Below, piece after piece: positions 1 to 45,523 of a DNA stretch of 64,000 nt. The notes below the pieces were generated by a model. That model ran no database searches and was not told the DNA's origin. It saw nothing but the letters and a program-made list of their open reading frames with translations. Where the stretch lies: positions 1-64,000 of IMG/VR virus record IMGVR_UViG_3300020202_000001; one strand, written 5' to 3'. The stretch's first letter is position 1. Every line of letters begins with the position of its first letter. The position numbers were made by a program, and so were the translations under genes.

Positions 1-2
1 CG

Positions 3-266
3 TGCGGGTGCGAGGTCGGGCCGCTGCACACGGACGTCGAGCACGACGAGGTGGGCGACGGGGAGGGCGGCGAGATCCCGATCGTCGTCTGCCCCGTGTG
101 CCGCGAGGTCGTGGCGTTTACACTGGAGCGGCTGACGGACCAACAGTGCAAGGAGGCGCTCGATGGGGCTGGCGAGGCAACACAAGCTGGACGAGCTGCG
201 GCGGCGGTTCAAGATGGCGGCCAAGCGGAAGCGCATGGCGGCCCGGGACACGTCCGTCTACCGTAA
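3..266 (+). CDS. 5'-truncated hypothetical protein with Cys motifs (CGC...CPVC), possible Zn-binding
   Basis: Open frame from window start to stop at 266, with high GC3 in the 5' part. Confidence 0.4.
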   Translation, partial: CGCEVGPLHTDVEHDEVGDGEGGEIPIVVCPVCREVVAFTLERLTDQQCKEALDGAGEATQAGRAAAAVQDGGQAEAHGGPGHVRLP

Positions 267-345
267 CGCCGACGACGAGATGCGTAAGGTCGAGCAGGAG
301 ATGCGGGAGTTCTTCCGCGGGCAGAAGAAGCAAGGAGGCAAGTGA
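163..345 (+). CDS. small basic hypothetical protein
   Basis: AAGGAGG upstream, high GC3, stop overlaps the next start. Confidence 0.55.
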   Translation: MGLARQHKLDELRRRFKMAAKRKRMAARDTSVYRNADDEMRKVEQEMREFFRGQKKQGGK

Positions 346-1055
346 TGGCCGGCGAGCTGACCGTCGTGATGCTGAACTGGATGCGGCCGGAGAACGTCCG
401 CCGCTTCGTGCACTTCTACGCCATGCACGACGCCGTGGCCCAGGTGCTGGTGGGCGACAACAACCCGCACGCCGGCCCGAGGCCGCACAGCCTGAACCTG
501 GCGAACCACCTGCCGCCCGACGCAGCCGAGAAGATCGTCGTGGCGTCGTTCAGCCAGGACGTCGGCCTGCCGTCGCGGTTCGCCCTGGCCGCCATGGCAC
601 GCACGGACCACGTCCTGATCTGCGACGACGACATCGACCTCCCCGACGACACGGTCCGCCGGCTGCTCGCCGAGTTCCAGCGGAACAACGCCGGGGCCGT
701 GGGCCTGCACGGCCGCAAGCCGGCGGAGGACGGGCGGTACACGATCGACAACCACTACGGCCCGGTGCCGATCCTGCTGACGCGGGCCGTCGTCACCACG
801 CCCCGCGTCGCCGGCGAGGCGCTGTGGCAGAGCGTCCGCATGGCCCGAGCCCTCGGCGGCGTCCCGTTCGGCAACGGCGAGGACATCGTGATGAGCTACG
901 TCGCGATGCGGCAGGCGGGCCGCCCGAACATCGCCGTGAGGCTGCCGTACAAGAACGTGGGGTTCAACGACGCCAACGCGATCAGCGTCCGCTACCCCAA
1001 GCACGAGGAGCACCGATCGAAAGTAGTTCAATGGTGCCGCGAGCACGTTCTCTGA
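342..1055 (+). CDS. glycosyltransferase, GT-A fold, GT64/EXTL2-like
   Basis: SRF..., VLICDDDI (DxD) and NGEDIVMS motifs resemble GT64. Confidence 0.7.
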   Translation: MMAGELTVVMLNWMRPENVRRFVHFYAMHDAVAQVLVGDNNPHAGPRPHSLNLANHLPPDAAEKIVVASFSQDVGLPSRFALAAMARTDHVLICDDDIDLPDDTVRRLLAEFQRNNAGAVGLHGRKPAEDGRYTIDNHYGPVPILLTRAVVTTPRVAGEALWQSVRMARALGGVPFGNGEDIVMSYVAMRQAGRPNIAVRLPYKNVGFNDANAISVRYPKHEEHRSKVVQWCREHVL

Positions 1056-1061
1056 AGTTTC

Positions 1062-1090
1062 TTGACACGTCCCCCCATCGGGGGTAACTT
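1062..1090 (+). promoter_or_regulatory. sigma70-type promoter
   Basis: TTGACA(1062)-17 bp-TAACTT(1085). Confidence 0.7.
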
Positions 1091-1096
1091 TCCTGA

Positions 1097-1357
1097 CGCT
1101 GGACGGGCATGGACGTGGAACGGGGCCAGGGATGGCCACTGGGGACAAGGATGTCACCACCGCGTCCGGCCGGTTCGGTGGGCGTTTTGACGGACGCCCT
1201 AAGAGCCGCAGAGGAGATGAGGTGTGCCGACGCAGCTCGACCCTGCGACGGGAGCCTCAACAAGAAACGGGGGCGGCCAGTGACTCCTTGGCCGCCCCTA
1301 CATTGAAATCTTCCCTCCACAGCCCGACCGGCTCACCCACGCGGTCGGGCTTCTTTG
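1097..1357 (+). ncRNA. candidate CsrB/RsmZ-like small RNA
   Basis: Lies between a promoter and an intrinsic terminator; 9 GGA motifs in 1101-1253; hairpins GGCC-AGGGAT-GGCC and GAC-AAGGAT-GTC; no convincing ORF. Confidence 0.55.
1321..1356 (+). terminator. intrinsic terminator
   Basis: AGCCCGACCG...CGGTCGGGCT stem followed by TCTTT. Confidence 0.7.
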
Positions 1358-1423
1358 TAACTGGAGGTTCTAACCCGCCCCGGCCCAGCCGGCACGGGGC
1401 ATACTCGTAGCAAGGAGGCTCAG

Positions 1424-3085
1424 ATGCCTGACCTTCGCCCGCCGCCCGGTTCCGACCTGTCCAAGCTCCGCAACCTCAAGGACACGCGCGTCGTCCTGCA
1501 GCGCGGGGCGACCTACCAGGCCTCCAGCGACTGGGGGCTCAAACGCAACGTCGAGGTCGTGGCCGAGGGGACCGGCGGCCCACGCCCGCGGGTCGACTTC
1601 CTCGACAGCGGTGCCGGCGTCCACCTCCTCGGCGCGCAGAACATTGCCGTCTCCGACGTCGCCCTGATCTGCGTCCACCCCCAGCCGTCCTCGGGCGGCG
1701 TCCGCTCGGTCAGCTCGAAGGACGTCCGCCTCACCCGCGTCGAGGTCGCCGGCTTCCGCAACGGCATGACCAGCGAGGGCAAGCCCGGCGAGCGCAGCTC
1801 GAACTTCACGGTCGAGCAGTGCTACGTCCACAACAACTTCAACGCCAAGCCGCCTACCGGCAGCCCGCACGGCGGCGGCCACAGCCAGGGCATCTTCACG
1901 AGCTACACGGACGGCCTCCGGCTCCTCCGCACGGTCTGGGACACCAACGGGTGGACGCCGGGCAAGGGGATCGCGACGCAGTTCAACCACAACGCCTACC
2001 TGAACGCCTCGTGCGGACCGGCCGAGGTGGTCGGCAACCTGTTCTACAACGGGGCGGCGACCGGCCTGCAGCACCGGTGCGGCGGGCCGAACTCGTACAA
2101 CCTGTTCCTCAACAACCCGATCGGCCTGACGTACGGCCTGGTCAACGGCGGCGGCCCGCTGTGCCAGGGCGGCGTCAGCGGCGACGTGCACCACCTCGTG
2201 TTCGTCGGCGGCCGGGACATCAACGGCAGCCCGCGCGGCAACGCGATGTCGTTCGCCAACTGCAAGCGGGTCCGCGTACGCGACGTGCTGATCGCCCACG
2301 CCCCGCAGGACAAGTTCCAGGCCGTTGCCCTCGAACGGTGCCGGATGGGTGCCGACAGCGAGTACCTGAACAAGCCGGGCGGCATCGACATCGGGATCGC
2401 CGACCTGGAGTTCGACCGGGTCTACGTCTGGGACTGGCCCAAGGGCGAGTGGATTCAGTCGATCGGCGGCCAGGACGTGAAGCGGCTGGTCAAGCCGCAG
2501 AGCTGGGCTCCGCCGAAGCGGCCCGACCTCCGCGAGTGGATCGAGGAGCGGGGCGTGCTCGCCAACGCCCGGGCGAGCTACGCGACGTTCGACGCCAAGC
2601 CGCTGATCGACCAGATGTTCGCCCTCGCCGGCGCTGGCCAGGCCCCGACGCCCACGCCGACCCCGCCGCCCCCGCCCACCCCGCAGCCGACCCCGCCGAG
2701 CGAGCCGCGGCTCGACCTGATCGCGGTCAAGCTCGACGGCAAGCCGGTCGGCCGGCTGCAGGGCTCGTCGCTGCACTCCCCGGTCGCGGTCAAGGCCGTG
2801 CCCGTGCTGCCGGGCGGCCGGGGCATCGACCGCGTGCACTTCAGCCTCGACAAGCTCGGGGACGAGAAGCCGCCGCTGCTGGAGAAGGAGGAGCGGACCC
2901 CGCCCTACGCCTTCCCCGGCGACACGGGCGGCGACCGGTTCACCAAGTTCCCGTGGACCAGCGGGGCGTACCGCATGGTCGCCCGGGGGTACGCCGGGAC
3001 CAAGGAGGTCGTCAAGCAGGTGGCGGAGTTCAGCGTCTGCACCGACGAGGAGGTCGCGGCCGCGCTGGCGGCGAAGGACGACTAG
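1424..3085 (+). CDS. right-handed parallel beta-helix (pectate-lyase-like) protein with Pro/Thr linker and C-terminal beta domain; possible depolymerase
   Basis: Asn-ladder repeats (HSQGIF, DTNGW, FNHNAY, GNLFYN), PTPTPTPPP linker, SD upstream. Confidence 0.6.
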   Translation: MPDLRPPPGSDLSKLRNLKDTRVVLQRGATYQASSDWGLKRNVEVVAEGTGGPRPRVDFLDSGAGVHLLGAQNIAVSDVALICVHPQPSSGGVRSVSSKDVRLTRVEVAGFRNGMTSEGKPGERSSNFTVEQCYVHNNFNAKPPTGSPHGGGHSQGIFTSYTDGLRLLRTVWDTNGWTPGKGIATQFNHNAYLNASCGPAEVVGNLFYNGAATGLQHRCGGPNSYNLFLNNPIGLTYGLVNGGGPLCQGGVSGDVHHLVFVGGRDINGSPRGNAMSFANCKRVRVRDVLIAHAPQDKFQAVALERCRMGADSEYLNKPGGIDIGIADLEFDRVYVWDWPKGEWIQSIGGQDVKRLVKPQSWAPPKRPDLREWIEERGVLANARASYATFDAKPLIDQMFALAGAGQAPTPTPTPPPPPTPQPTPPSEPRLDLIAVKLDGKPVGRLQGSSLHSPVAVKAVPVLPGGRGIDRVHFSLDKLGDEKPPLLEKEERTPPYAFPGDTGGDRFTKFPWTSGAYRMVARGYAGTKEVVKQVAEFSVCTDEEVAAALAAKDD

Positions 3086-3173
3086 GGGTAGCATTTATGG
3101 TCTCATGCGGTTTCGGGCCGCCCGCAACCCCACAGCGGCCCAGTCCAGCGTTTCGTGAAAGGAGTCACGCACC

Positions 3174-3581
3174 ATGCGGACTTTCCGTTCCCGGTTCTCG
3201 GCCCTCGTGGCCGTCGCGTTCCTGTCCTCGCTCCTGCTCGGCCTGACCGGCTGCGGCGGGAAGAACATCAACACCGCCAACACCGGCGGCACGCTGACCG
3301 GCGTCGTCGACCGGCACGACAAGTACGTGCAGGCCGACCCCAACGTCGACCAGGCCGAGGCCCTCGCCGACTCGGCGGTGCTCAGGCAGGCGTGGCAGGC
3401 GGAAAGCGTACCGGCCAACGCGATCGAGGCCCCCTTAAACCGCGTCGCCGACCGGCACGACGGGTACGTCCAGTCGGACGGGACCCTGCCGCCCTACAAG
3501 CAACGCGCGAACCTACGCGACACCGCGATCCTGCGGGAGCTGCTGAAGGTCGGGAGGGCGACACCCGCCACCAACCCCTAA
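3174..3581 (+). CDS. putative lipoprotein
   Basis: Basic N-terminus, hydrophobic stretch, lipobox LTGC. Confidence 0.7.
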   Translation: MRTFRSRFSALVAVAFLSSLLLGLTGCGGKNINTANTGGTLTGVVDRHDKYVQADPNVDQAEALADSAVLRQAWQAESVPANAIEAPLNRVADRHDGYVQSDGTLPPYKQRANLRDTAILRELLKVGRATPATNP

Positions 3582-3659
3582 CGGCCGTCGCCCCGTAGCG
3601 GCGGCCCGCACCGCGTCCACGGACGGACGCACGAGACGACGTGACAAGGAGGTCACCCA

Positions 3660-3983
3660 GTGCCCAACCCCGAGAACGACAACCTCAAGCAGCAGGCGAC
3701 GCAGGCCCTCGTCGAGAGCCTGAACGACCTGATCGTCGGTGCCCGGTCCGACCTGCAGAACTTCGCCCAGGCGATCATCGCCGACTCGGTCGACGCGGCG
3801 GCGGCCGGCGACCAGGAGACGTTGGCCCAGCTCCGCAACCAGACGAAGTCCCTCATGGAACTGAACCGCCTCCGGGCGGTACACGGTGCCGAGCGGACGA
3901 TCTTCCGGCTGGTGGGGCTGGCCCTGAACCTGGTCCTGAAGTTCGTGGTCCCGATCCCCCTCACCGGCGTCCAGCAGATCTAA
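3660..3983 (+). CDS. hypothetical protein with C-terminal hydrophobic segment
   Basis: GTG start after AAGGAGG; high GC3. Confidence 0.65.
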   Translation: MPNPENDNLKQQATQALVESLNDLIVGARSDLQNFAQAIIADSVDAAAAGDQETLAQLRNQTKSLMELNRLRAVHGAERTIFRLVGLALNLVLKFVVPIPLTGVQQI

Positions 3984-4014
3984 CCCACCTGCTGATCCCA
4001 CGACGCCACCGCCC

Positions 4015-4050
4015 AGAGCCCCCGGTCCGCCGCCGGGGGCTCTTTGTTTT
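4015..4050 (+). terminator. intrinsic terminator
   Basis: AGAGCCCCCGG/CCGGGGGCTCT stem + TTGTTTT. Confidence 0.8.
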
Positions 4051-4059
4051 CCCTCGGAT

Positions 4060-4077
4060 CTCAAAACCGGTTTTTGG
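4060..4077. repeat. dispersed palindromic motif copy 1
   Basis: CTCAAAACCGGTTTTTGG (reverse orientation of consensus). Confidence 0.85.
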
Positions 4078-4208
4078 GACTTTGCCGTAGACCCGATCGG
4101 GGGATGGTGGTTAAGATGGCCTCGCTCGAAGGAGTGTCACGGCACGGATGCCCCGCCCGCGTTGGGCGGTAAACAAGGACTTCTCTTGACCGTACCAGGC
4201 CCGCAATC

Positions 4209-4448
4209 ATGTTCTCAGTGGCCGCGAAAGTTCGGCCCTACTGCCCGGACGAGCACATCACCGCTCGCCAGCTCCGGGGGTTAGGCTTCTACCTCTCCGA
4301 GATGATCCCGGACGAGGCCTTCGTGCGCCGGGTGGCCGTGGGGTTGAACGACGACGAGGAGCTGGACGACGGCTCCTCGACCCTCGGCCTCCGGGTGGAC
4401 GAGCCGTTCGCAGTCGCGAGTGAGCTGGAGCTGGCAGCCGTGGCATAA
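4209..4448 (+). CDS. hypothetical protein
   Basis: ORF with plausible composition. Confidence 0.5.
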   Translation: MFSVAAKVRPYCPDEHITARQLRGLGFYLSEMIPDEAFVRRVAVGLNDDEELDDGSSTLGLRVDEPFAVASELELAAVA

Positions 4449-4477
4449 TGCCCTCGACGTGCAAAGGAGTGCACACC

Positions 4478-4888
4478 ATGAACCGCATCGGCTTCCTCTT
4501 CCGTTCCCTGCTCGCCCTGGTCGTCTCCCTGTTCCGCGTCTCGCGACGGCGGTACCGGGCCGCCCGCGCGAGCTGGTTCCCCCGCCAGCGGCCCGCGAAC
4601 GCCTACGCCAAGCCGCTCCAGACCTGTAAGGACATCGCCCGGATCACGGCGACGGCGATGCGGCAGAACCGCAGCGCCAACATCGTCGTCGACGCCGGCG
4701 GGTACGTGTACGAGTCGGACGTGACCATCCCGCAGGGGAAGGGTTACATGCCGCTCGAAGGCGTGCTCGTCGACGACTCGGCCTACTACGTCGGGGCCAA
4801 GTTCGACGTGCGGCACGACGGCCGCAAGAGCGTGGTCAACCTGGGCCGGTCTCGGCCCGCCACGCTGAAGACGCTCACCGCCGCCTGA
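4478..4888 (+). CDS. hypothetical protein
   Basis: ATG 4478 after the AAGGAG hairpin; high GC3. Confidence 0.6.
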   Translation: MNRIGFLFRSLLALVVSLFRVSRRRYRAARASWFPRQRPANAYAKPLQTCKDIARITATAMRQNRSANIVVDAGGYVYESDVTIPQGKGYMPLEGVLVDDSAYYVGAKFDVRHDGRKSVVNLGRSRPATLKTLTAA

Positions 4889-4971
4889 AGACGCGGCCGG
4901 CTGACACACAGAGACCAGCGGGGACGGCCGTCGCGCGTGCGGCGGCCGTCTTCGCGTCACGAGGAGACGCC

Positions 4972-5202
4972 ATGGAAGAGAGCACGGACAACAAGACGTT
5001 CGCCACCGAGGTGAAGGACCACGTCCACACGATCACGGTCCACGGGGCCGACGACAGCCTCCAGTGGGCCGTGGCCGACAAGGGGGCCAAGGCACCGGTC
5101 GCGGTGACCCGCTCGGGCTCGACCCTGACCGCCACGACCCGCGACGAGGCCACCGCCGCCGAGATCCAGGCCTTGCTGAAGGCTGCCGGGTACCGCGGGT
5201 AG
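4972..5202 (+). CDS. hypothetical protein
   Basis: GAGGAG SD; high GC3. Confidence 0.6.
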   Translation: MEESTDNKTFATEVKDHVHTITVHGADDSLQWAVADKGAKAPVAVTRSGSTLTATTRDEATAAEIQALLKAAGYRG

Positions 5203-5211
5203 GCCGTTTCC

Positions 5212-5240
5212 TTGCCCGTTATCCCCCGTTCGGGTACTGT
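5212..5240 (+). promoter_or_regulatory. putative sigma70-type promoter
   Basis: TTGCCC-17 bp-TACTGT. Confidence 0.45.
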
Positions 5241-5262
5241 CTTGCGTCAAAGGAGACCCCCG

Positions 5263-6309
5263 ATGAACTCACGACGCGACTTCCTCCGAACGGCCGTGGC
5301 GGCCGGGACTGCAGCCTTGGTCCCGGCCGCCGCTTTCGGGCACGTCCAGAAGCGAACCGTGCTCAACAAGGAGTGGGCGGTCACGCTCGCCCCCGAGCTG
5401 CCGCCCAACCCGTTCGTCATCACGACGGACTTCGGCCGCAACACGACCTTCAGCCTCGACGACGCGAAGCTCTCCGGCCTGTGCGTCCAGTCGGTGACCG
5501 CCTTTCACCACCGGGCCAACGGCCCCGGGCGTGACGACGAGTACCACGTCACGATCGACGCGATCTACGTCACCCCGCCCAAGACCAAGCCCAAGCGGGA
5601 GCCGGTCACCCGCACGGTCATCCTGGCCCGCGCCGACATCGCCAAGGCCGAGCGCGGCCTGACGCCGCGGATCTCGCGGCTGGAGTGCTACGACGTCGTG
5701 AAGTGGATGCGGCACCCGGACCTCGACATCACCCAGCCGGTCGTCCCCCAGGTGCTCAAGTACCTGCACCGCGTCACCGACATTCACTGGGCCGCCTACA
5801 ACGACATCTTCGAGCAGGCCCCGATCGAGCCGACGTACGCCGGCCACGCGATCGTCGACCCCGTCGTCGGCAAGGTGCCGATGCTGGCGGACGGCACGAA
5901 GCTCCCGCTCCGGGTCATCTCGACCAACCGCGACGACTTCAGCTGCGTCCACAAGGTGACGCTGTGCGGCGTGGCGACCGTGAAGTTCGCCGTCGACATC
6001 GAGGCGGACTACTGGAAGGCCCTGCCGGTCGGCCGGCACACGTTCAAGAGCTTCCGGCTGGCCGTCCACGAGGACGGCTTCCTGCACGTCTTCAGCGAGC
6101 CCGAGGGCGAGGCCGACCCCAAGCTGTTCAGCTTCGGGCTGCCGGCGACCTACGGCCCGCCGCTGCGGTACATCACCCCGCGCGTCGACGTCAACCCGGA
6201 CACGGTGGCCAAGATCAGGTCGATGTTCCAGGAGAGCCGCAAGGGCGACTGGCACGTCATGCCGTACCCGGTCGAGTACCAGCCCCTGACGCCCACGATC
6301 GGAGGCTGA
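5263..6309 (+). CDS. hypothetical protein with twin-arginine (Tat)-like signal
   Basis: MNSRRDFLRTAVAAGTAALVPAAAFG; SD AAGGAG. Confidence 0.65.
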   Translation: MNSRRDFLRTAVAAGTAALVPAAAFGHVQKRTVLNKEWAVTLAPELPPNPFVITTDFGRNTTFSLDDAKLSGLCVQSVTAFHHRANGPGRDDEYHVTIDAIYVTPPKTKPKREPVTRTVILARADIAKAERGLTPRISRLECYDVVKWMRHPDLDITQPVVPQVLKYLHRVTDIHWAAYNDIFEQAPIEPTYAGHAIVDPVVGKVPMLADGTKLPLRVISTNRDDFSCVHKVTLCGVATVKFAVDIEADYWKALPVGRHTFKSFRLAVHEDGFLHVFSEPEGEADPKLFSFGLPATYGPPLRYITPRVDVNPDTVAKIRSMFQESRKGDWHVMPYPVEYQPLTPTIGG

Positions 6310-6312
6310 CCC

Positions 6313-7200
6313 GTGACGACGCTGCCCGTCATCGGCGTGATGCTGACGCAGCCGTCCCGCGAGGGCCTGGCGGTGCGGGCGATCACTGACTTCGTCAACC
6401 AGACGGTCCCCCGCAAGTCGCTGTACGTCTACACGACGGACCACGACTACGCGATCCGCCTGATGAACCGGTTCATGCCGCAGCTCGGCACCGTGTTCGT
6501 CGTCGCGGCCCGCCCGGGCTCGACCCCGCAGGACATGCTGCGGGCCGGGCTCTCGCAGGCCCGGGAGACGATGGGGTACGTCGCCCTCTGGGACGACGAC
6601 ATCCGCCACCACCCGGGCCGGCTGGAGCGGCAGACCGTCCAGACGGACGACGCGAACCGCCCCAGCCTGCTCAGCTCCGGCGTCTGGCACTTCTTCGACA
6701 GCGACGAGCTGTTCGTGTACCGCCTCGACAAGCGGCACGAGCCGCTGAAGGTGCGGCTGGTCGGCTCCACGCTCGTCTGCCGGGCCGAGCGGGTGACGGA
6801 CGACCTGATCCCGGTGAAGTACACTGGCAGCCCGACGCACGCCCTCGGCATGTCGGTCGTGCAGCGGTACGACGCCGTGCGGCCCACGGACGAGTGGTGG
6901 TGGATGGTGTTCGGCGTCCGCGGCGACAACGCGGGCGGTTACGAGTTTCACAGGAAGTGGGCCACGAACAAGGACCGGTGCCCTAGCGCCGCGTGGCTCC
7001 GAGAGAACCAGGTACTCCTGCGGCACTGGCTCGGTCAGTACGCGTGGGACGTTCCCAGGCTGGACGTCTGTGGCCAGGACGGCGTGGCGTTCCAGTTCGA
7101 GCCGCCCACGCTGTGGGGTCCAGAGGTGCCGCCGGTCGGCGAGCCCGAGGGCTTCGAGCGCGTGCGGGAAGTGCTGCAAGAGGAAACCAACAATGGCTAA
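6313..7200 (+). CDS. glycosyltransferase-like (GT-A/GT2) protein
   Basis: Segments AITDFVNQT and YVALWDDDIRHHPGRLERQ are typical of GT2. Confidence 0.55.
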   Translation: MTTLPVIGVMLTQPSREGLAVRAITDFVNQTVPRKSLYVYTTDHDYAIRLMNRFMPQLGTVFVVAARPGSTPQDMLRAGLSQARETMGYVALWDDDIRHHPGRLERQTVQTDDANRPSLLSSGVWHFFDSDELFVYRLDKRHEPLKVRLVGSTLVCRAERVTDDLIPVKYTGSPTHALGMSVVQRYDAVRPTDEWWWMVFGVRGDNAGGYEFHRKWATNKDRCPSAAWLRENQVLLRHWLGQYAWDVPRLDVCGQDGVAFQFEPPTLWGPEVPPVGEPEGFERVREVLQEETNNG

Positions 7201-7480
7201 GAAGACCAACGCCCTCGACCCCGAGACGACGCCGAACCACCCGGAGCTGACGCTGCGGGAGGTGCAGATCGCCATCGGGATCGCCGAGGGCAAGACCTAC
7301 CCCGAGATCGGCGACGCGCTGGGCCTCGGGTACGAGACCGTCCGGTCGTACGTCAACCGGCTCCGCGAGAAGACCTGCAGGCGGCGGAAGGCCGAGCTGG
7401 CCATCTGGGCGTCGCAGGAGCGGAGCTGGCTCGAACACCAACAGACCGACCTCACCGCGAAGGGCCAGACCGATGTTTGA
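7193..7480 (+). CDS. LuxR/GerE-family helix-turn-helix regulator (stand-alone)
   Basis: LTLREVQI...AEGKTYPEIGDALGLGYETVRSYVNRLREK. Confidence 0.85.
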   Translation: MAKKTNALDPETTPNHPELTLREVQIAIGIAEGKTYPEIGDALGLGYETVRSYVNRLREKTCRRRKAELAIWASQERSWLEHQQTDLTAKGQTDV

Positions 7481-8024
7481 ACTCGTCAAGGGCTGGAACC
7501 TGCTCAAGGGGCAGGACGACTGGGAGGAGTACCGGAAGCAGTTCGCCGAGAACCAGGGCTGGGCCACCGACCAGGTCGCGTGGGGTGCCGGCCCGGTGAA
7601 GTTCCCGGCGATGGTCGTGTCGTACGCCCCGATGTACGCCAAGGTGGTCAGCTGCTACTTCTACGACGACGAGGCACGCAAGCTGCTGTCGGCCGCGACC
7701 GGCGTGCCCCTGCGGCCGCTGAAGGGCTGGCCGCCGCCGCAGACGCTCGACGGCCCGCAGCCCGAGCGGATCGTCGAGCGGGTCAACACGGTCGGCCCCA
7801 ACCAGGGCGAGACGAACAAGCACGTCGCGGCGACCCTGCTGAGCGTCGTGCAGGTGCTGCTCGACAAGCGGCTCATCACGGCCGAGGCGTTCGAGGCCAA
7901 GATGCAGGCGAACCTCGCGGCCGTCGACGGGTTCAAGACCGAGCACCAGGCGACGATCGCGTCCCTGGTCGACCCCACGCACATGCTCGGCGGCCTGCTG
8001 CCCGAGCCCGACACCGAGGGCTGA
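7473..8024 (+). CDS. hypothetical protein
   Basis: Coupled ORF, high GC3. Confidence 0.6.
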   Translation: MFELVKGWNLLKGQDDWEEYRKQFAENQGWATDQVAWGAGPVKFPAMVVSYAPMYAKVVSCYFYDDEARKLLSAATGVPLRPLKGWPPPQTLDGPQPERIVERVNTVGPNQGETNKHVAATLLSVVQVLLDKRLITAEAFEAKMQANLAAVDGFKTEHQATIASLVDPTHMLGGLLPEPDTEG

Positions 8025-9255: not shown

Positions 9256-9263
9256 GGTCGCGG

Positions 9264-9600
9264 TGGACGGGACACGCTTCGGCGGGGTATGCTAGTAGCA
9301 GGTAAGCCGTTGGCCGCGAGCGTCGGCCGGTAATGGACGGGTGGCGATGCCAAGGATGGCGACACCACCCACGGAACGGCGTCATGGCGTGAAGGCCCGA
9401 CGCCCGGTGGTGCGACGGAACGCTCAATTCGCCGTCGCAAACGGAGTCACGCTTAGCGGCGTGATACCACGGAGCCGGAAACCGACTCGGACGCGGCGGG
9501 CGAACCGCCGTGACAACCCCGAGGTGGCTGGGGAAACCGGCAGCGAGCTTACCGCAGTACAACGCACGGACGTACCCGTAGAGTCACGGAGGACTCGCCA
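9264..9600 (+). promoter_or_regulatory. putative promoter plus long GGA-rich structured leader or sRNA
   Basis: TGGACG-18-TATGCT; 8 ANGGA motifs in 9333-9591, three in clean hexaloop hairpins. Confidence 0.5.
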
Positions 9601-10073
9601 TGCCCGGCCACATTCTCGCCCAGAGCCTCGACACCTGGAACCCGCTGACCGTCATCATCGCAGCGGCGGTCCTGATCTACGTCGCCTGCCAGGGGGCCGT
9701 GATGGTCATCCGCGCCCTCCGCGGCGACAAGGAGAAGACCAGCTTCGAGCAGCAGATGGGCGGCATCCTGAGCCGGCTCGGCAACGTCGAGCAGCAGACC
9801 GGGAGCATCGCCAAGGACTTCGTCCCGCCCGACGCCTTCGCCGGGATGCTCAAAGGCCAGGTCCTCGACACGATCCTCGAAATCCAGCGGAGCCAGGACC
9901 AGCACGCGGCACTCGCGCGGCCGGTCGTCCCCCCGGCTCCGGTGGGCACCACGCAGACCACGGTCGCCGCCACGACGACCACGACGCAGCCCGTTCGGGC
10001 CGCAGCCCCCCGCCCGGCTCCAGCGCCGGGCACCGCCGTCCACACGGCGGCCGGGGCACTCGGTCAGCGATAG
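9600..10073 (+). CDS. membrane protein (N-terminal TM)
   Basis: Hydrophobic LTVIIAAAVLIYVAC; SD in hairpin. Confidence 0.6.
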   Translation: MPGHILAQSLDTWNPLTVIIAAAVLIYVACQGAVMVIRALRGDKEKTSFEQQMGGILSRLGNVEQQTGSIAKDFVPPDAFAGMLKGQVLDTILEIQRSQDQHAALARPVVPPAPVGTTQTTVAATTTTTQPVRAAAPRPAPAPGTAVHTAAGALGQR

Positions 10074-10690: not shown

Positions 10691-11241
10691 TCGAAGTGCT
10701 CGACGGCCCCGGCTACTGGGACAGGCAGGCGTACGCCCTCGGCAGGCTCAAGGCCGCCGAGGACGACACGCCGACGCCCTCCTACAGCATGTCCGGCCTC
10801 CTGTACGTCTCCGAGGCGTCGGGGCGGCCGTGGGCGTGCCTGTCCGTGCCGAACGCCCTGGTCCGTGGCATGTTCGACGCGCTGACCGAGCCGGGGATCG
10901 AGCTGCCGATGACGGACGGGAAGCTGAACGCGCACATCAGCGTCTTCCGGCCCGAAGAGATCGAGATGCTGGGCGGACCCGAGGCACTAAAAAACGACCG
11001 AGGGAAGCCCTTTCGGTACTCCCTCGGTCGTCTGGTCGAGTTGACCCCGGCGGCTTGGGCCGACATGGCCAAGTGCTGGGTGCTTAGGGTTCATTCGCCC
11101 GAGCTGCAACAGCTGCGTCGAAGCCATGGGCTCTCGGGGCTGCCGAAGGACGGCGAGTACGACTTCCACATCACGGTGGCTGTCAGGCGGAAGGGCGTAC
11201 TCGGTCGCAACGACACCGCCAAGGCTACGGACGCGGCTTAG
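10687..11241 (+). CDS. 2H phosphoesterase superfamily protein
   Basis: Two Hx[S/T]x motifs, HISV and HITV, ~78 aa apart. Confidence 0.75.
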   Translation: MIEVLDGPGYWDRQAYALGRLKAAEDDTPTPSYSMSGLLYVSEASGRPWACLSVPNALVRGMFDALTEPGIELPMTDGKLNAHISVFRPEEIEMLGGPEALKNDRGKPFRYSLGRLVELTPAAWADMAKCWVLRVHSPELQQLRRSHGLSGLPKDGEYDFHITVAVRRKGVLGRNDTAKATDAA

Positions 11242-11729
11242 CAGGCCAGGCTAGGGGCGAAAGGGGACGGGGCCGCCTGACGGTTCTCGCGGCGGATCGC
11301 CTCGTACACTTCCTTACGGTGGACCGGGACGTCGGCCGGGGCCACGAACCCGAGCCGGACCTTGTCGCCGCGGATGTCGACGACCGTGTACTCGCAGGCC
11401 GTGGGTACCTTGTACCCCTCGCCCCTGCCGGCCGCGACCGCGTCGGCGAACTTCTGCAGCTCCGCGGGCTCCACCAGCACGATCGACTCGTCCCGCTGGC
11501 GGGAGAGGACGAGGTTGCCCCCGCCCTTGCGCTCGCGGACCGGCGGCGGCTGGTTGCCCCGGGCGATGTCCTGTAGGATCTGGACGTAGAGTTCCTTGCG
11601 GTAGACCTGGTACTGCTCCGGGGCCTTGATGCCGGTACGGACCTTGTCGCCGCGGATGTCAACGACGGTGACCTCGACGTCATCGCCGATGAGCGTGGAC
11701 TCGTCTCGTTGACGGGAGAGAACGAGCAT
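11238..11729 (-). CDS. csrA: tandem two-domain carbon storage regulator CsrA/RsmA
   Basis: Two repeats of LVLSRQRDES...TVVDIRGDKVR.G..AP....V.RKE.Y; the only well-supported minus-strand gene. Confidence 0.92.
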   Translation of the reverse strand: MLVLSRQRDESTLIGDDVEVTVVDIRGDKVRTGIKAPEQYQVYRKELYVQILQDIARGNQPPPVRERKGGGNLVLSRQRDESIVLVEPAELQKFADAVAAGRGEGYKVPTACEYTVVDIRGDKVRLGFVAPADVPVHRKEVYEAIRRENRQAAPSPFAPSLAC

Positions 11730-11765: not shown

Positions 11766-11794
11766 TTGACTTCCTGACAGCCGGTAAAGATACT
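11766..11794 (+). promoter_or_regulatory. putative sigma70-type promoter
   Basis: TTGACT-17 bp-GATACT. Confidence 0.5.
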
Positions 11795-11838
11795 ACCCCC
11801 GAACGGGGGACGACACAAGCAACACTGGACACATTGCC

Positions 11839-13542
11839 ATGGATGGCACGACGACCGCGCAAATCTGTCTTCCGCGGGTGGAGCTGCCCCCGAGCGGACT
11901 GAACAACGCCCGCTTGGCCTTGTCGAAGCTGGGTGAGGCCCGAGCCCTCGCCGAAGAGGTGGCTTCCGCGGCTGCCGCCACGGACGTAAAACCCACCCTC
12001 GCTCAGCGTAAAGCCGGTAACTACAAGAAGGGGAAGGTCGCCATCCATGGCCTTGTGGTCTCCGTCGAAAACCCTCGGGGCTCATACCGCGAGGGGACCG
12101 CACCGGACGGAAGCAAGTGGCGTACCAAGATGGAGCACCACTACGGCGCGATCACGGGTACGACAGGACGTGACGGCGACGCGGTCGACGTGTTCGTCGG
12201 CCCCGACCCCGACTGCGAGCTGGTGTTCGTGGTCAACCAGAACGACCCGGCGACCGGCCGGTTCGACGAGCACAAGGTCATGCTCGGGTTCACGACCGAG
12301 GCCGACGCGCGGGCCGGGTACCTGGCCTGCTACGAGAAGGGGTGGAAGGGGCTCGGCTCGATCAAGCCGATGACCCTCGACGATTTCAAAAACCGGTTTT
12401 TGAAAGGCGACCTCACCAAGAGGGCCAAGGAAGGCGACCATGCCCGTAGCGAAGATGCCGCCGCAGAAGGTGAACCTGACCGGGAAGATCCTGCGGGGGA
12501 AGGACGGCCGCCGGCGGCAGATGGTCAGCGGCCAGCTCGTGATGCTCGACGGCCCGACGACGCCGGCGAGCAGGGCGGCGACTCCATCCTCGCCGGCCTC
12601 CCCGACGCCGCCGACCGGGAACCACCTGCTGTCGCCGCCGATGGTGATCGCGGACGCGGACGGCCTGGCGAAGGCGGCGAGCCGGGGGCTGAAGGTGGGC
12701 GTGCTGCGGTACCCGGACGGGTCGCTGGCGGTGGTGCACGGCCTGTCGGGGAAGAACCTGCTGACGGACCGCGGCCGGATCGACATGATGGTGACGCAGG
12801 CGGGCCACGACCCGAAGCGGCTGGTGAAGTTCGGGGAGATGAAGGCGGCGGACGTGATCCGCTACCGGCGGGAGAACGCGAAGCTCGCGAACCAGCCGAG
12901 CGGGCGGATGAAGGAGGCGGACGCGGACGCTGGACCGATCTACTCGCTGGTCTCGTCGGGCCTGCTGACGAGCGAGGAGGCGATGGCGATCCTGGGGACG
13001 ATCACGACGCCGACGCCGCAGACGCCGCACGGCCGGCTCCGGGCGATGGGCTTCAAGGACGAGCTGATCGAGACGATCGTGCGGGACAGCCCGGCGTCGC
13101 CGACGATGCTGGCGTCGCCGGCGGCGGCCCCGCCGATGATCCCCAAGCCGGCCAAGGAGAGGAAGCGGCGGATCGACCAGCTCCCCGACCCAAGACCGTA
13201 GCCGTCGACCTCGACGGCACGCTCGCCGAGGAGTACGAGACGTTCGACCCGAAGGTGATCGGCGAGCCGATGCCCGACGTCGTCGCCTGGCTCCGCAAGT
13301 TCAAGGCGACCGGGGCCGTCGTCATCATCTGGACCGTCCGCGGCGACGACGCCCTGGTCAAGGCCTGGGCCGACAAGCACCAGATCCCGTACGACTACAT
13401 CAACGAGAACCCGCACCAGCCGCCGGACAGCAGCGGCAAGCTCGTCGCCGACGTCTACCTCGACAACCGGGCGATCCGGGCGGAGGGGACGTGGGACGAG
13501 TTCGCGCCGGCGGTGCTGGAGCAACTTCAGGAGGCCGCATGA
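11839..13542 (+). CDS. inorganic-pyrophosphatase-like (polyvalent-protein InPase) domain + disordered linker + HAD phosphatase domain; start uncertain
   Basis: AGNYKKG..ENPRGS..YG.I.GT.G.DGDAVDVF..FDEHKVMLGF; C-terminal AVDLDGTLA and DVYLDNRA. Confidence 0.7.
   Translation: MDGTTTAQICLPRVELPPSGLNNARLALSKLGEARALAEEVASAAAATDVKPTLAQRKAGNYKKGKVAIHGLVVSVENPRGSYREGTAPDGSKWRTKMEHHYGAITGTTGRDGDAVDVFVGPDPDCELVFVVNQNDPATGRFDEHKVMLGFTTEADARAGYLACYEKGWKGLGSIKPMTLDDFKNRFLKGDLTKRAKEGDHARSEDAAAEGEPDREDPAGEGRPPAADGQRPARDARRPDDAGEQGGDSILAGLPDAADREPPAVAADGDRGRGRPGEGGEPGAEGGRAAVPGRVAGGGARPVGEEPADGPRPDRHDGDAGGPRPEAAGEVRGDEGGGRDPLPAGEREAREPAERADEGGGRGRWTDLLAGLVGPADERGGDGDPGDDHDADAADAARPAPGDGLQGRADRDDRAGQPGVADDAGVAGGGPADDPQAGQGEEAADRPAPRPKTVAVDLDGTLAEEYETFDPKVIGEPMPDVVAWLRKFKATGAVVIIWTVRGDDALVKAWADKHQIPYDYINENPHQPPDSSGKLVADVYLDNRAIRAEGTWDEFAPAVLEQLQEAA
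12384..12405. repeat. dispersed palindromic motif copy 3 (intragenic, perfect 22-bp palindrome)
   Basis: TTTCAAAAACCGGTTTTTGAAA. Confidence 0.9.
12440..13201 (+). CDS. hypothetical protein nested in another frame within the InPase-HAD ORF
   Basis: Own GCC-AAGGAA-GGC hairpin/RBS; this frame has the genome-typical GC3 and normal amino-acid composition. Confidence 0.65.
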   Translation: MPVAKMPPQKVNLTGKILRGKDGRRRQMVSGQLVMLDGPTTPASRAATPSSPASPTPPTGNHLLSPPMVIADADGLAKAASRGLKVGVLRYPDGSLAVVHGLSGKNLLTDRGRIDMMVTQAGHDPKRLVKFGEMKAADVIRYRRENAKLANQPSGRMKEADADAGPIYSLVSSGLLTSEEAMAILGTITTPTPQTPHGRLRAMGFKDELIETIVRDSPASPTMLASPAAAPPMIPKPAKERKRRIDQLPDPRP

Positions 13543-14018: not shown

Positions 14019-14362
14019 TGCCCACAGCACAAGAGAAGGCCCACCGCCTGGAACGGCTGATCGCCCTGTACGGAACCGACGACGTCGAGGAGATCGCCCG
14101 CGCGCTGGGCTGCTCCGTCAACGACGTGACGCTCGACCACCTGCCCAACATGGGCGGCGACGGGTTCGGCAACCCGCCCCTCCCGCTGGTCATGAACACA
14201 ACAACGGACAACACCCAAAATCCGTTGTTCAAATTGTGGCAGGACGGACAGACGAGGCCGTTGCATCCCCCGAAGAGGGGGTCCACAATAGGCGGTGCCG
14301 CACTGGAGGCCGCGGTGGCCGCAGTGGTAGACGGCTTGAAGGGTCCGGGTTTGCGTAAGTAG
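14018..14362 (+). CDS. hypothetical protein, possible N-terminal HTH
   Basis: VEEIARALGCSVNDV. Confidence 0.45.
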   Translation: MPTAQEKAHRLERLIALYGTDDVEEIARALGCSVNDVTLDHLPNMGGDGFGNPPLPLVMNTTTDNTQNPLFKLWQDGQTRPLHPPKRGSTIGGAALEAAVAAVVDGLKGPGLRK

Positions 14363-19956: not shown

Positions 19957-20319
19957 ATGGACGCGCGTACCGCATTTAAGCAGGGCTTCATCGCCCACTG
20001 CATCGAGCTGGGACACACCGACCCGGCCGCGATCCGCGACATCGTCAAGCAGGCGTTCGTCACGGAGGCGGTCAACAAGGTCACGAACTTCGCCACCGGG
20101 GCCGGCAAGCTCGGCCTCGGGCTCGCCCTCGCCGCCCCGCCGATCGTCGGCGGCGTCGCCGGCCACCTCGCGGCCAAGGCGACCGACGTCTCGGACTACG
20201 ACGTCGAGGAGGCCAAGAAGCAAGAGGTCATCGACGAGTACCGCCGCCAGGCCGAGCGCATGCGGCGGTCCGGGCTGCTGCGTCGGTACACGGCGGGCGG
20301 GCCGGGCAACCTGCTCTAA
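19957..20319 (+). CDS. putative virion protein with hydrophobic Gly/Ala helix
   Basis: AAGGAGG SD; KQA motif. Confidence 0.6.
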   Translation: MDARTAFKQGFIAHCIELGHTDPAAIRDIVKQAFVTEAVNKVTNFATGAGKLGLGLALAAPPIVGGVAGHLAAKATDVSDYDVEEAKKQEVIDEYRRQAERMRRSGLLRRYTAGGPGNLL

Positions 20320-33787: not shown

Positions 33788-33817
33788 TTGTCCCCCGTAG
33801 GGGGCAACGGTTATAGT
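33788..33817 (+). promoter_or_regulatory. putative sigma70-type promoter
   Basis: TTGTCC-18 bp-TATAGT. Confidence 0.55.
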
Positions 33818-33860
33818 TGAGGCTCGGGCTACACGGACCGGTTTTCCACGGATGGAACAA

Positions 33861-45401: not shown

Positions 45402-45523
45402 GCACCGGGAGCAGTCGCAGCAGTGTTCTTTTGAGTCACCGTAGGCCGGTTACGCCTCAGGGATGAGGCGAGGCCTGCGGGAGACGGATCGACAACCACG
45501 ACAACGATCACGGAGGATCGACC

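What the first reader, a model, noticed from the sequence alone, without database searches (positions are those of the whole stretch)
1062..1357. Candidate phage CsrB/RsmZ-like sponge sRNA
Seen: a self-contained unit of TTGACA-17-TAACTT promoter, ~260 nt and an intrinsic terminator (1321-1356). It has 9 GGA motifs, six within 1101-1151. One is GAC-AAGGAT-GTC, matching the ACARGGAUGU core of the known CsrA SELEX consensus; another is GGCC-AGGGAT-GGCC. A strong stem GGGGCGGCCA/TGGCCGCCCC lies at ~1270-1298. Established: CsrB/RsmZ are multi-GGA sRNAs that sequester CsrA. Inference: this is the antagonist arm of the phage Csr circuit and would de-repress late genes or titrate host CsrA.
Basis: partly seen in the sequence, partly recalled or inferred. 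Interest (0 to 1): 0.8.

Follow-up and report, generated by a model that had tools for sequence, protein, structure and literature searches.

The report
Phage leader RNA with CsrA sites
A soil jumbo phage that encodes its own CsrA regulator also has a short non-coding RNA unit with two textbook CsrA-binding hairpins. Related phages show that the unit is a lengthened, terminated gene leader that can hold about one CsrA, not a CsrB-like multi-site sponge.

Summary
Positions 1056-1423 are a non-coding gap with no codon bias. It holds a TTGACA-17-TAACTT promoter, two hairpins that display CAGGGAUG and CAAGGAUG 19 nt apart, a strong stem (1270-1298) and an intrinsic terminator (1321-1358).

The promoter belongs to a conserved class: TTGnnn, a 17-nt spacer with a CCCCC-N-GGGGG palindrome, then TAnnnT. 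The phage uses the same class for its own tandem csrA gene (11238-11729, minus strand) and its RNR operon.

The sponge reading is only partly supported:
- Only 2 of the 9 GGA motifs are predicted to be exposed. In an E. coli CsrB control, 19 of 22 are.
- No Rfam family matches.
- In two related phages (L004, L008) the same promoter and GGA pair sit directly before the SD of the downstream beta-helix gene, with no terminator. That is a classical CsrA-controlled leader.
- Only the window and L003 have a lengthened, terminated version.

Best reading: a leader-derived CsrA-binding RNA that acts as an attenuator and/or a one-dimer decoy. No RNA data were listed, so transcription and binding are inferred.

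A better conserved, GGA-rich structured RNA lies at 9256-9599.

The parts
1062..1090 (+). Promoter: -35 TTGACA (1062-1067), 17-nt spacer holding the palindrome CCCCCC-ATC-GGGGG (1071-1084), -10 TAACTT (1085-1090). The predicted start is near 1097.
   Evidence: It is the only match of its kind in the window. The same -35/17/-10 layout is kept in L003, L004 and L008. The same class stands before csrA and RNR in this phage and in the L035 phage. It recurs before genes in other high-GC IMG/VR phages.
1108..1115 (+). GGA site 1, CATGGACG, 19 nt before site 2. It is predicted to be paired in the closing helix of the junction.
   Evidence: By position it is homologous to the CAAGGATG of L004.
1124..1137 (+). 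Hairpin GGCC-AGGGAU-GGCC, which displays CAGGGAUG in its loop.
   Evidence: Unpaired probability of the GGA is 1.0. A 17-nt block is identical in L004, and L008 has CGGGGCCACGGA.
1144..1155 (+). Hairpin GAC-AAGGAU-GUC, which displays CAAGGAUG. Its GGA lies 19 nt after the previous one.
   Evidence: Unpaired probability is 1.0. ACAAGGATG is kept in L003 and L004, and ACAAGGA in L008. It is an exact match to ACARGGATGT.
1181..1200 (+). Hairpin around TTGACGGACGC.
   Evidence: The 11-nt core is identical in L003, with different stem flanks.
1268..1300 (+). T1: a 12-bp GC-rich hairpin with a weak U tail in the window.
   Evidence: The homologous hairpin in L003 has a TTTTCATTT tail and ends about 16 nt before the start codon of the downstream gene.
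1321..1358 (+). T2: an intrinsic terminator with a 10-bp stem, an 11-nt loop and the tail TCTTTGT.
   Evidence: It is one of 9 such sites on the + strand, 6 of them non-coding. It is formed in both the MFE and the centroid fold.
1411..1426 (+). SD CAAGGAGG and the ATG of the beta-helix gene (1424-3085). No recognisable promoter lies between T2 and this SD.
   Evidence: There is no TTGAC and no AAAACCGGTTTT motif in 1357-1423.
11238..11729 (-). Tandem csrA gene (163 aa, two CsrA domains). This is the likely protein partner.
   Evidence: Pfam CsrA E = 2.9e-35 in 2 stretches. PDB CsrA hits. AlphaFold pLDDT 92.4. A 59%-identical homologue lies on the L004/L035 contig.
11790..11818 (-). csrA promoter of the same class: TTGTGT, the spacer cgtcccccgttcggggg, then TAGTAT. 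The csrA SD lies in the hairpin aucgaAAGGAGucgau.
   Evidence: The same architecture and an identical SD hairpin are found in L035.

Best explanation
This is a leader-derived CsrA-binding RNA, not a CsrB-type sponge.

Proposed mechanism:
1. A host-sigma70-type promoter starts an RNA near 1097. The promoter belongs to the palindrome-spacer class that the phage also uses for its csrA gene.
2. The first ~60 nt fold into a junction that displays two hexaloop hairpins, AGGGAU and AAGGAU, 19 nt apart.
3. Together the two hairpins form one two-point binding site. It would fit one CsrA dimer, or one molecule of the phage's single-chain tandem CsrA.

In relatives L004 and L008 the same promoter and site pair lie 30-50 nt before the SD of the beta-helix gene. 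That is a classical CsrA-repressed 5' UTR and probably the ancestral state. In this phage and in L003 the leader has grown to 200-260 nt, and terminators (T1, T2) now separate the sites from the gene.

Most transcripts should therefore end as a ~205-260-nt non-coding RNA holding one high-affinity CsrA site. Read-through would give the beta-helix mRNA. The RNA would then gate expression of the downstream gene in cis, through termination or stability. If abundant, it would also act in trans as a low-capacity decoy, holding about one CsrA per RNA.

Shown in silico: the region is non-coding, the promoter class is conserved, the GGA words are conserved, and the terminator is present. Inferred: transcription, CsrA binding, and the direction of any effect.
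For: - Non-coding: GC3 is 0.65-0.69 in every frame against 0.91-0.97 in the neighbouring genes.
- Promoter: it is unique in the window. It is kept with 17-nt spacing in L003, L004 and L008. The same class stands before csrA and RNR in two phages and before many genes in other phages.
- GGA sites: shared words of 7-8 nt or more between the four gaps are nearly all GGA sites or the promoter palindrome. GGA spacing is 19 nt in the window, 19 in L004 and 18 and 17 in L008.
- Exposure: both hairpin loops have unpaired probability 1.0.
- Rarity: CA[AG]GGATG occurs 6 times in the window (positions). Four of these are non-coding and two are here.
- Paired sites: pairs of CANGGAN[GC] sites 17-21 nt apart occur 7 times against 0.26 expected, also at leader-plus-SD positions of other genes.
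- SD hairpins: 13 of 36 GGA-type SDs sit in loops of hairpins with stems of at least 5 bp, against 1.8 expected and 0 of 1000 shuffles.
- Leader ancestry: L004 and L008 have no terminator, and their third GGA is the SD.
- Terminators: T2 matches the phage's own terminators. L003 has a strong T1 about 16 nt before the ATG.
- Published motif: CAAGGAUG in a stem-loop is the CsrA motif (bioRxiv 10.1101/2025.07.22.666180).
Against: - No RNA run was listed that holds this sequence, so neither the transcript nor its ends are shown.
- Only four related loci exist. The long versions (window and L003) align poorly at about 50% identity, and no shared fold is supported beyond a few hairpins.
- No convincing antiterminator was found in the window, and only a suggestive one in L003.
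- In a 69% GC genome, SD-in-loop hairpins could serve ribosome access rather than CsrA.
- The binding preference of the tandem CsrA is unknown.
- In the window the SD lies about 260 nt from the two hairpins, so direct translational repression by that pair is unlikely.
Confidence: 0.45

Rival explanations
1. It is a true trans-acting sponge. A discrete, abundant ~260-nt sRNA would have the main job of sequestering phage or host CsrA and so releasing CsrA-repressed mRNAs.
For: - It is a self-contained unit of promoter, non-coding body and terminator.
- Its promoter class is shared with csrA.
- It has two exact CARGGAUG hairpins.
- L003 carries 10 GGA in about 210 nt ahead of a strong terminator, and the SD of its downstream gene has no GGA.
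- The phage has many plausible CsrA targets.
Against: - Only 2 of 9 GGA are exposed, against 19 of 22 in CsrB.
- No Rfam match.
- The discrete form is absent from L004 and L008.
- The body 1160-1300 is poorly conserved.
- A far better conserved GGA-rich RNA lies at 9256-9599, with 7 exposed GGA.
Confidence: 0.2
2. It is an ordinary long 5' leader or spacer with terminators and has nothing to do with CsrA. The GGA hairpins would be SD-like ribosome standby or accessibility elements, RNA-stability hairpins, or sites for another factor.
For: - The module always precedes the same gene.
- SD-in-loop hairpins are common in this GC-rich genome and could simply keep SDs single-stranded.
- The enrichment of such hairpins is weak in the relative L035: 5 of 22 against 4.1 expected.
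Against: - The two loops read GGAUG, which is the CsrA consensus, not the GGAGG of an SD.
- The 19-nt spacing is kept while the surrounding sequence diverges.
- The phage and its relative both keep a tandem CsrA, whose own SD sits in an AAGGAG hexaloop.
Confidence: 0.2
3. It is a chance cluster of GGA motifs and hairpins in a GC-rich intergenic region, or the decayed remnant of a lost gene, with no function.
For: - Nine GGA in 296 nt is not unusual.
- High-GC sequence folds readily.
- The segment 1160-1423 is missing from L004 and L008.
Against: - The promoter and GGA words are conserved across four diverged loci.
- Six GGA in 51 nt occurs in 0.03% of windows.
- Folding z-score is -3.9.
- No reading frame is conserved, and there is no Pfam hit for ORF 1109-1306.
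Confidence: 0.05

Closest known systems
CsrB/CsrC and RsmX/RsmY/RsmZ sponge sRNAs of Gammaproteobacteria
   Same: It is a non-coding unit with its own promoter and an intrinsic terminator. GGA motifs are shown in hairpin loops and match CANGGANG. A csrA gene lies nearby in the genome.
   Different: There is no sequence or structure homology (Rfam). Only 2 GGA are exposed, against 19 of 22 in E. coli CsrB. There is no GacA/UvrY box. Relatives show it to be a gene leader. The setting is a phage, and the host is probably a member of the Planctomycetota.
CsrA/RsmA-repressed mRNA leaders such as glgC and hcnA, with several GGA sites and one over the SD (own knowledge; the hcnA-RsmE structure 2jpp appears)
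   Same: L004 and L008 have exactly this layout: promoter, two upstream GGA sites 18-19 nt apart, then a GGA in the SD. The window keeps the promoter and the site pair, and its SD reads CAAGGAGG.
   Different: In the window about 260 nt and two terminator hairpins lie between the site pair and the SD, so direct occlusion of the SD by the same dimer is unlikely.
mRNA leaders that double as CsrA decoys or CsrA-controlled termination and stability elements: the fim leader of Salmonella, the pgaA leader with Rho, the flhDC 5' end (own knowledge, not checked here)
   Same: A cis-linked leader carries high-affinity CsrA sites far from the SD. Its effect could act on termination or stability, or it could titrate CsrA.
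   Different: No experimental data exist here. The terminators are intrinsic. The element is phage-encoded, and its partner is a tandem (single-chain) CsrA.
Phage-encoded CsrA homologues, for example PTXU04_00028 (PMC11879866)
   Same: A phage carries a csrA homologue. [quoted passage not shown]
   Different: That work concerns the protein only. My literature searches found no phage-encoded CsrA-binding RNA partner.

Membership tests
CsrB/RsmZ-type sponge sRNA | Homology to a curated family (CsrB, CsrC, RsmX, RsmY, RsmZ/PrrB and relatives in Rfam) | tested here: not met
   There are no matches at gathering score in the whole window. At E up to 10 in 950-1500 there are only weak, unrelated hits.
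CsrB/RsmZ-type sponge sRNA | Many GGA motifs (about 5 to 22), most of them in hairpin loops or single-stranded linkers | tested here: not met
   There are 9 GGA, and only 2 have unpaired probability above 0.5. The mean is 0.34 against a background of 0.33. The E. coli CsrB control has 22 GGA with 19 exposed, at 0.80 against 0.44.
CsrB/RsmZ-type sponge sRNA | A discrete non-coding gene with its own promoter and an intrinsic terminator | tested here: met
   Met in silico only. There is no codon bias, the promoter class is conserved, and T2 resembles the phage's other terminators. The transcript itself has not been observed.
CsrB/RsmZ-type sponge sRNA | Kept as a discrete sRNA in related genomes | tested here: inconclusive
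   A terminated long form is present in the window and in L003. L004 and L008 have only a 90-95-nt 5' UTR without a terminator.
CsrB/RsmZ-type sponge sRNA | GacA/UvrY upstream activating sequence TGTAAG-N6-CTTACA (gammaproteobacterial members) | tested here: not met
   There is no match within 3 mismatches near 1062. The feature is not expected outside Gammaproteobacteria.
CsrB/RsmZ-type sponge sRNA | Binds several CsrA dimers and relieves repression of target mRNAs | not testable with these tools
   This needs gel shift or ITC and reporter assays.
CsrA-controlled 5' leader | At least two GGA sites in the 5' UTR at a spacing that one dimer can bridge (about 10-63 nt, own knowledge) | tested here: met
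   GGA lie at 1111, 1130 and 1149, 19 nt apart. Spacing is 19 nt in L004 and 18 and 17 nt in L008.
CsrA-controlled 5' leader | One site overlaps the SD or start codon of the regulated gene | tested here: inconclusive
   This is met in L004 (GAGGAG) and L008 (CATGGAGG). In the window the SD is CAAGGAGG in a stem of only 3 bp, about 260 nt from the hairpin pair. L003's SD has no GGA.
CsrA-controlled 5' leader | Co-transcription with the downstream gene | not testable with these tools
   No RNA run was listed. Indirect support: no promoter motif of either class lies between T2 and the ATG.
Terminator-based attenuator leader | An intrinsic terminator between the promoter and the SD, with no promoter in between | tested here: met
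   T2 is in the window. In L003 the terminator ends about 16 nt before the ATG.
Terminator-based attenuator leader | A mutually exclusive antiterminator whose formation the ligand or protein controls | tested here: inconclusive
   In L003, folding of the nascent RNA pairs the 5' arm of T1 with a GGGAC-containing stretch. In the window only a 6-bp alternative was found.

The most novel reading that the evidence does not exclude
The phage carries a self-contained Csr module with three parts:
- a single-chain tandem CsrA;
- a set of phage mRNAs whose SDs sit in ANGGAG hexaloops;
- a leader-derived decoy RNA whose two hairpins, 19 nt apart, fit the protein's two RNA-binding faces.

The decoy RNA and csrA are driven by the same palindrome-spacer promoter class. 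Their ratio would then time translation of phage genes during infection. This would be the first phage-encoded CsrA antagonist RNA.
Probability: 0.2. Interest if true: 0.8.

Novelty: new variant of a known kind. Interest (0 to 1): 0.55.

Why it matters
Phage-encoded CsrA homologues are known, but the paper read here says their role in the phage life cycle had not been tested before (PMC11879866). My literature searches found no RNA partner. This locus offers concrete, testable RNA ligands for a phage CsrA:
- a pair of exact consensus hairpins under a promoter of the same class as csrA;
- a set of SD hairpins on phage genes.

It also shows a plausible evolutionary route from a CsrA-repressed leader to a free-standing CsrA-binding RNA.

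The RNA is not CsrB-like, its capacity is about one CsrA, and nothing shows that it is transcribed or bound.

Tried and rejected
- Rfam at gathering and at permissive thresholds gave nothing relevant.
- Similarity search against GenBank phages with 1-8000 found no match.
- The generic promoter and terminator scan missed both features because of its fixed criteria. I replaced it with pattern and custom scans.
- Coding reading of ORF 1109-1306 and ORF 1132-1410 was rejected. There is no GC3 bias, no Pfam hit for ORF 1109-1306, and the frames are not kept in L003 or L004.
- A search for a repeated copy of the element elsewhere in the window gave only chance 10-11-mers.
- A metagenome scan with the GT alignment returned 26 loci. 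All but the source contig were distant at 30-45% identity and lacked the module.
- The IMG/VR scan for the 16-nt hairpin word gave 23 hits. All but the source were unrelated.
- The short contigs of P0007 and P0009 were not informative or had no DNA.
- The RNA-run search listed none. The DNA contigs only confirm the sequence.
- Consensus folding of the window against L003 is too diverged to support a shared fold.
- The L008 gap 9681-10049 is not clearly homologous to 9256-9599.
- Foldseek with the tandem CsrA model ranks CsrA chains first among PDB hits, but at weak E-values. It cannot test the pseudo-dimer arrangement.

Full report
**Context**

The window is the first 64 kb of IMGVR_UViG_3300020202_000001, a 224-kb contig from a soil metagenome. 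GC content is 69%, and nearly all genes lie on the + strand.

It encodes a multisubunit RNA polymerase and a ribonucleotide reductase, as well as a major head protein. It is therefore a jumbo phage. The closest single-domain CsrA relatives are from Phycisphaeraceae and Planctomycetota MAGs, so the host is probably a planctomycete.

**Observation**

- Positions 1056-1423 form a 368-nt gap between a GT64-like glycosyltransferase gene (342-1055) and a beta-helix protein gene (1424-3085).
- The gap has no third-position GC bias in any frame. GC3 is 0.65-0.69 against 0.91-0.97 in the neighbours, so ORF 1109-1306 is not a gene.
- Nine GGA in 296 nt is ordinary, but six in 51 nt is found in 0.03% of windows.
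- Three CANGGANG words at 1108, 1127 and 1146 stand exactly 19 nt apart.
- The RNA strand folds better than shuffles (z = -3.9).
- The terminator at 1321-1358 was missed by the generic scan because its loop is 11 nt. It is one of only nine hairpin-plus-T-tail sites on the + strand, six of which are non-coding.
- Two independent run assemblies carry the stretch identically.

**The promoter is real and belongs to a class**

TTGAC-N17-19-TAnnnT occurs once in 64 kb on both strands. Loci found through homologues of the GT gene keep the same layout at the same place:

| Locus | -35 | Spacer | -10 |
|---|---|---|---|
| L003 | TTGACA | 17 nt | TAGGGT |
| L004 | TTGACT | 17 nt | TACGCT |
| L008 | TTGACA | 17 nt | CATCAT |

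In L003 and L004, as in the window, the spacer holds a CCCCC-N-GGGGG palindrome. L008 lacks it.

The same architecture precedes other genes:
- The phage's csrA gene on the minus strand has TTGTGT, the spacer cgtcccccgttcggggg, then TAGTAT. Its spacer differs from the finding's at three positions.
- The RNR operon has it at 14261-14289.
- Gene 33852 has a similar site.
- The related phage keeps it before its own csrA and RNR genes.
- Other high-GC IMG/VR phages carry up to ten copies, each before a gene.

A second, different motif, tcCAAAAACCGGTTTTGAGAa, precedes about ten other genes in the window. It is absent from the gap.

**The Csr context is real**

- Gene 11238-11729 (minus strand) encodes a 163-aa protein with two CsrA domains. 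Both domains keep the arginines needed for RNA binding. The AlphaFold model has pLDDT 92.4.
- A 59%-identical tandem CsrA lies on the contig of L004/L035.
- The SD of csrA itself sits in the hairpin aucgaAAGGAGucgau in both phages.
- Of 36 window genes with a GGA-type SD, 13 have it in the loop of a hairpin with a stem of at least 5 bp. Shuffles give 1.8, and 0 of 1000 reach 13.
- Some of these SD hairpins covary between phages.
- Pairs of CANGGAN[GC] sites 17-21 nt apart occur 7 times against 0.26 expected.

**What the relatives say**

Shared words of 7-8 nt or more among the four gaps are nearly all GGA sites or the promoter palindrome:
- ACAAGGATG is in the window, L003 and L004, and ACAAGGA is in L008.
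- A 17-nt block, CGGGGCCAGGGATGGCC, is identical in the window and L004.
- TTGACGGACGC is shared by the window and L003.

In L004 and L008 the gap is only 85-95 nt: promoter, two GGA sites 18-19 nt apart, then an SD that contains the third GGA, then the ATG of the beta-helix homologue. There is no terminator. That is the layout of a CsrA-repressed leader.

L008 is the most distant relative, at 45-50% GT identity, so the short form is probably ancestral. The window and L003 share a lengthened form with a homologous hairpin T1. In L003, T1 has a strong U tail about 16 nt before the ATG. The window adds T2.

**Test of the sponge reading**

| RNA | GGA count | Predicted exposed | Mean unpaired probability vs background |
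|---|---|---|---|
| Window 1097-1356 | 9 | 2 (1130 and 1149, each 1.0) | 0.34 vs 0.33 |
| L003 long form | 10 | 2 | 0.32 vs 0.37 |
| E. coli CsrB (control, same method) | 22 | 19 | 0.80 vs 0.44 |

No Rfam family matches, and there is no GacA/UvrY box. The body 1160-1300 is poorly conserved. The RNA therefore fails the defining features of the CsrB/RsmZ class, although it keeps one excellent two-point site.

**Mechanism**

My best reading (confidence 0.45) is a leader-derived CsrA-binding RNA. A host-type promoter of the same class as the csrA promoter fires, and the 5' junction offers a bidentate site for one CsrA dimer or one tandem CsrA. Most transcripts stop at T1 or T2, and read-through gives the beta-helix mRNA. 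No promoter of either class lies between T2 and the ATG.

CsrA could act on termination or stability in cis. The terminated RNA could also act as a one-site decoy in trans. An antiterminator is suggestive in L003 but not in the window.

Transcription, binding and the direction of the effect are all inferred. No RNA run was listed.

**Rivals**

- A true sponge (0.2).
- A leader unrelated to CsrA (0.2).
- Chance or a decayed remnant (0.05).

The loops read GGAUG, the CsrA consensus, rather than the SD's GGAGG. The published motif is CAAGGAUG in a stem-loop. This favours CsrA over a ribosome-access role.

**Literature and novelty**

Phage csrA homologues are known. The paper read here says their role in the phage life cycle had not been tested before (PMC11879866). 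My searches found no phage-encoded CsrA-binding RNA. I rate the finding a new variant of a known kind.

**Side finding**

Positions 9256-9599 are 81% identical to L035, although the proteins checked in these two phages (GT64-like, CsrA) are only about 60% identical. Twenty-two of 90 consensus pairs show compensatory changes. The stretch has 14 GGA with 7 exposed, and no Rfam match. If this phage has a conserved multi-site CsrA-binding RNA, that is the better candidate.

Noticed in passing
window 9256-9599 (+); L035 12366-12694 (-): A structured non-coding RNA of about 340 nt. It is 81% identical between the two phages although the proteins checked in them (GT64-like, CsrA) are about 60% identical. 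22 of 90 consensus pairs show compensatory changes. It has 14 GGA, 7 predicted exposed, including a CCAAGGAUGG hairpin with a covarying stem. There is no Rfam match. It ends at the SD hairpin of gene 9600.
   Followed up: partly
window 11238-11729 (-): A tandem (two-domain, single-chain) CsrA with a ~25-aa helical insertion in domain 2. At least 22 diverse tandem homologues exist in metagenomes. The AlphaFold model has pLDDT 92.4 and pTM 0.81.
   Followed up: partly
window-wide, e.g. 3648, 9588, 26159, 45512, 56951, 59958; 50422/51269/52382: Shine-Dalgarno sequences sit in hexaloops (AAGGAG, ACGGAG, UGGGA) of 5-6-bp hairpins. This applies to 13 of 36 GGA-type SDs, against 1.8 expected. Some covary with L003 and L035. 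The enrichment is weak in L035.
   Followed up: partly
window 4065, 8325, 12391, 19475, 28768, 37148, 42689, 47601, 54004, 63259 (+): A recurrent motif tcCAAAAACCGGTTTTGAGAa, mostly just upstream of genes. It is probably the promoter or operator for the phage's own RNA polymerase. A related AAAACGGTTTTTGAG is found in L004/L035.
   Followed up: no
window 1062, 11790-11818 (-), 14261-14289, 33788-33817; L095 6437; IMG/VR loci L066, L080, L113, L122, L137, L067, L079, L127: A promoter class of TTGACA-like -35, a 17-18-nt spacer made of a CCCCC(C)-N3-5-GGGGG(G) palindrome, and a TAnnnT -10. It is shared by several high-GC phages, with up to 10 copies in one 58.7-kb contig. The role of the palindrome (operator or something else) is unknown.
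   Followed up: partly
window 11837-11850 and 33846-33859 (+): The start codons of two genes lie inside GGA hairpin loops (ugccAUGGAUggca and uuccACGGAUGgaa) with no upstream SD. Gene 11839-13542 was missed by my GC3 filter but reads as coding.
   Followed up: no
window 45402-45523 (+): The leader of the major head protein gene holds a 7-bp hairpin displaying CAGGGAUG (45458). Its GGA lies 51 nt before the GGA of the SD hairpin cgatcACGGAGgatcg. This is a likely strong CsrA target.
   Followed up: no
window 3438-3526 (-) and 20067-20146 (-): ARAGORN calls tRNA-Tyr and tRNA-Lys on the minus strand, inside + strand genes with strong codon bias (3174-3581 and 19957-20319). They are probably false positives.
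   Followed up: no
window 21647-26152 and 28817-31573 (+): One 1501-aa protein joins Rpb2-type (beta) and Rpb1-type (beta-prime) RNA polymerase domains. A second 918-aa protein carries Rpb1 domain 5.
   Followed up: no
L009 (Ga0196974_1000007, 224418 bp): The same phage is on record as a contig of identical length but with a different start point, so the genome is probably circular or circularly permuted.
   Followed up: no
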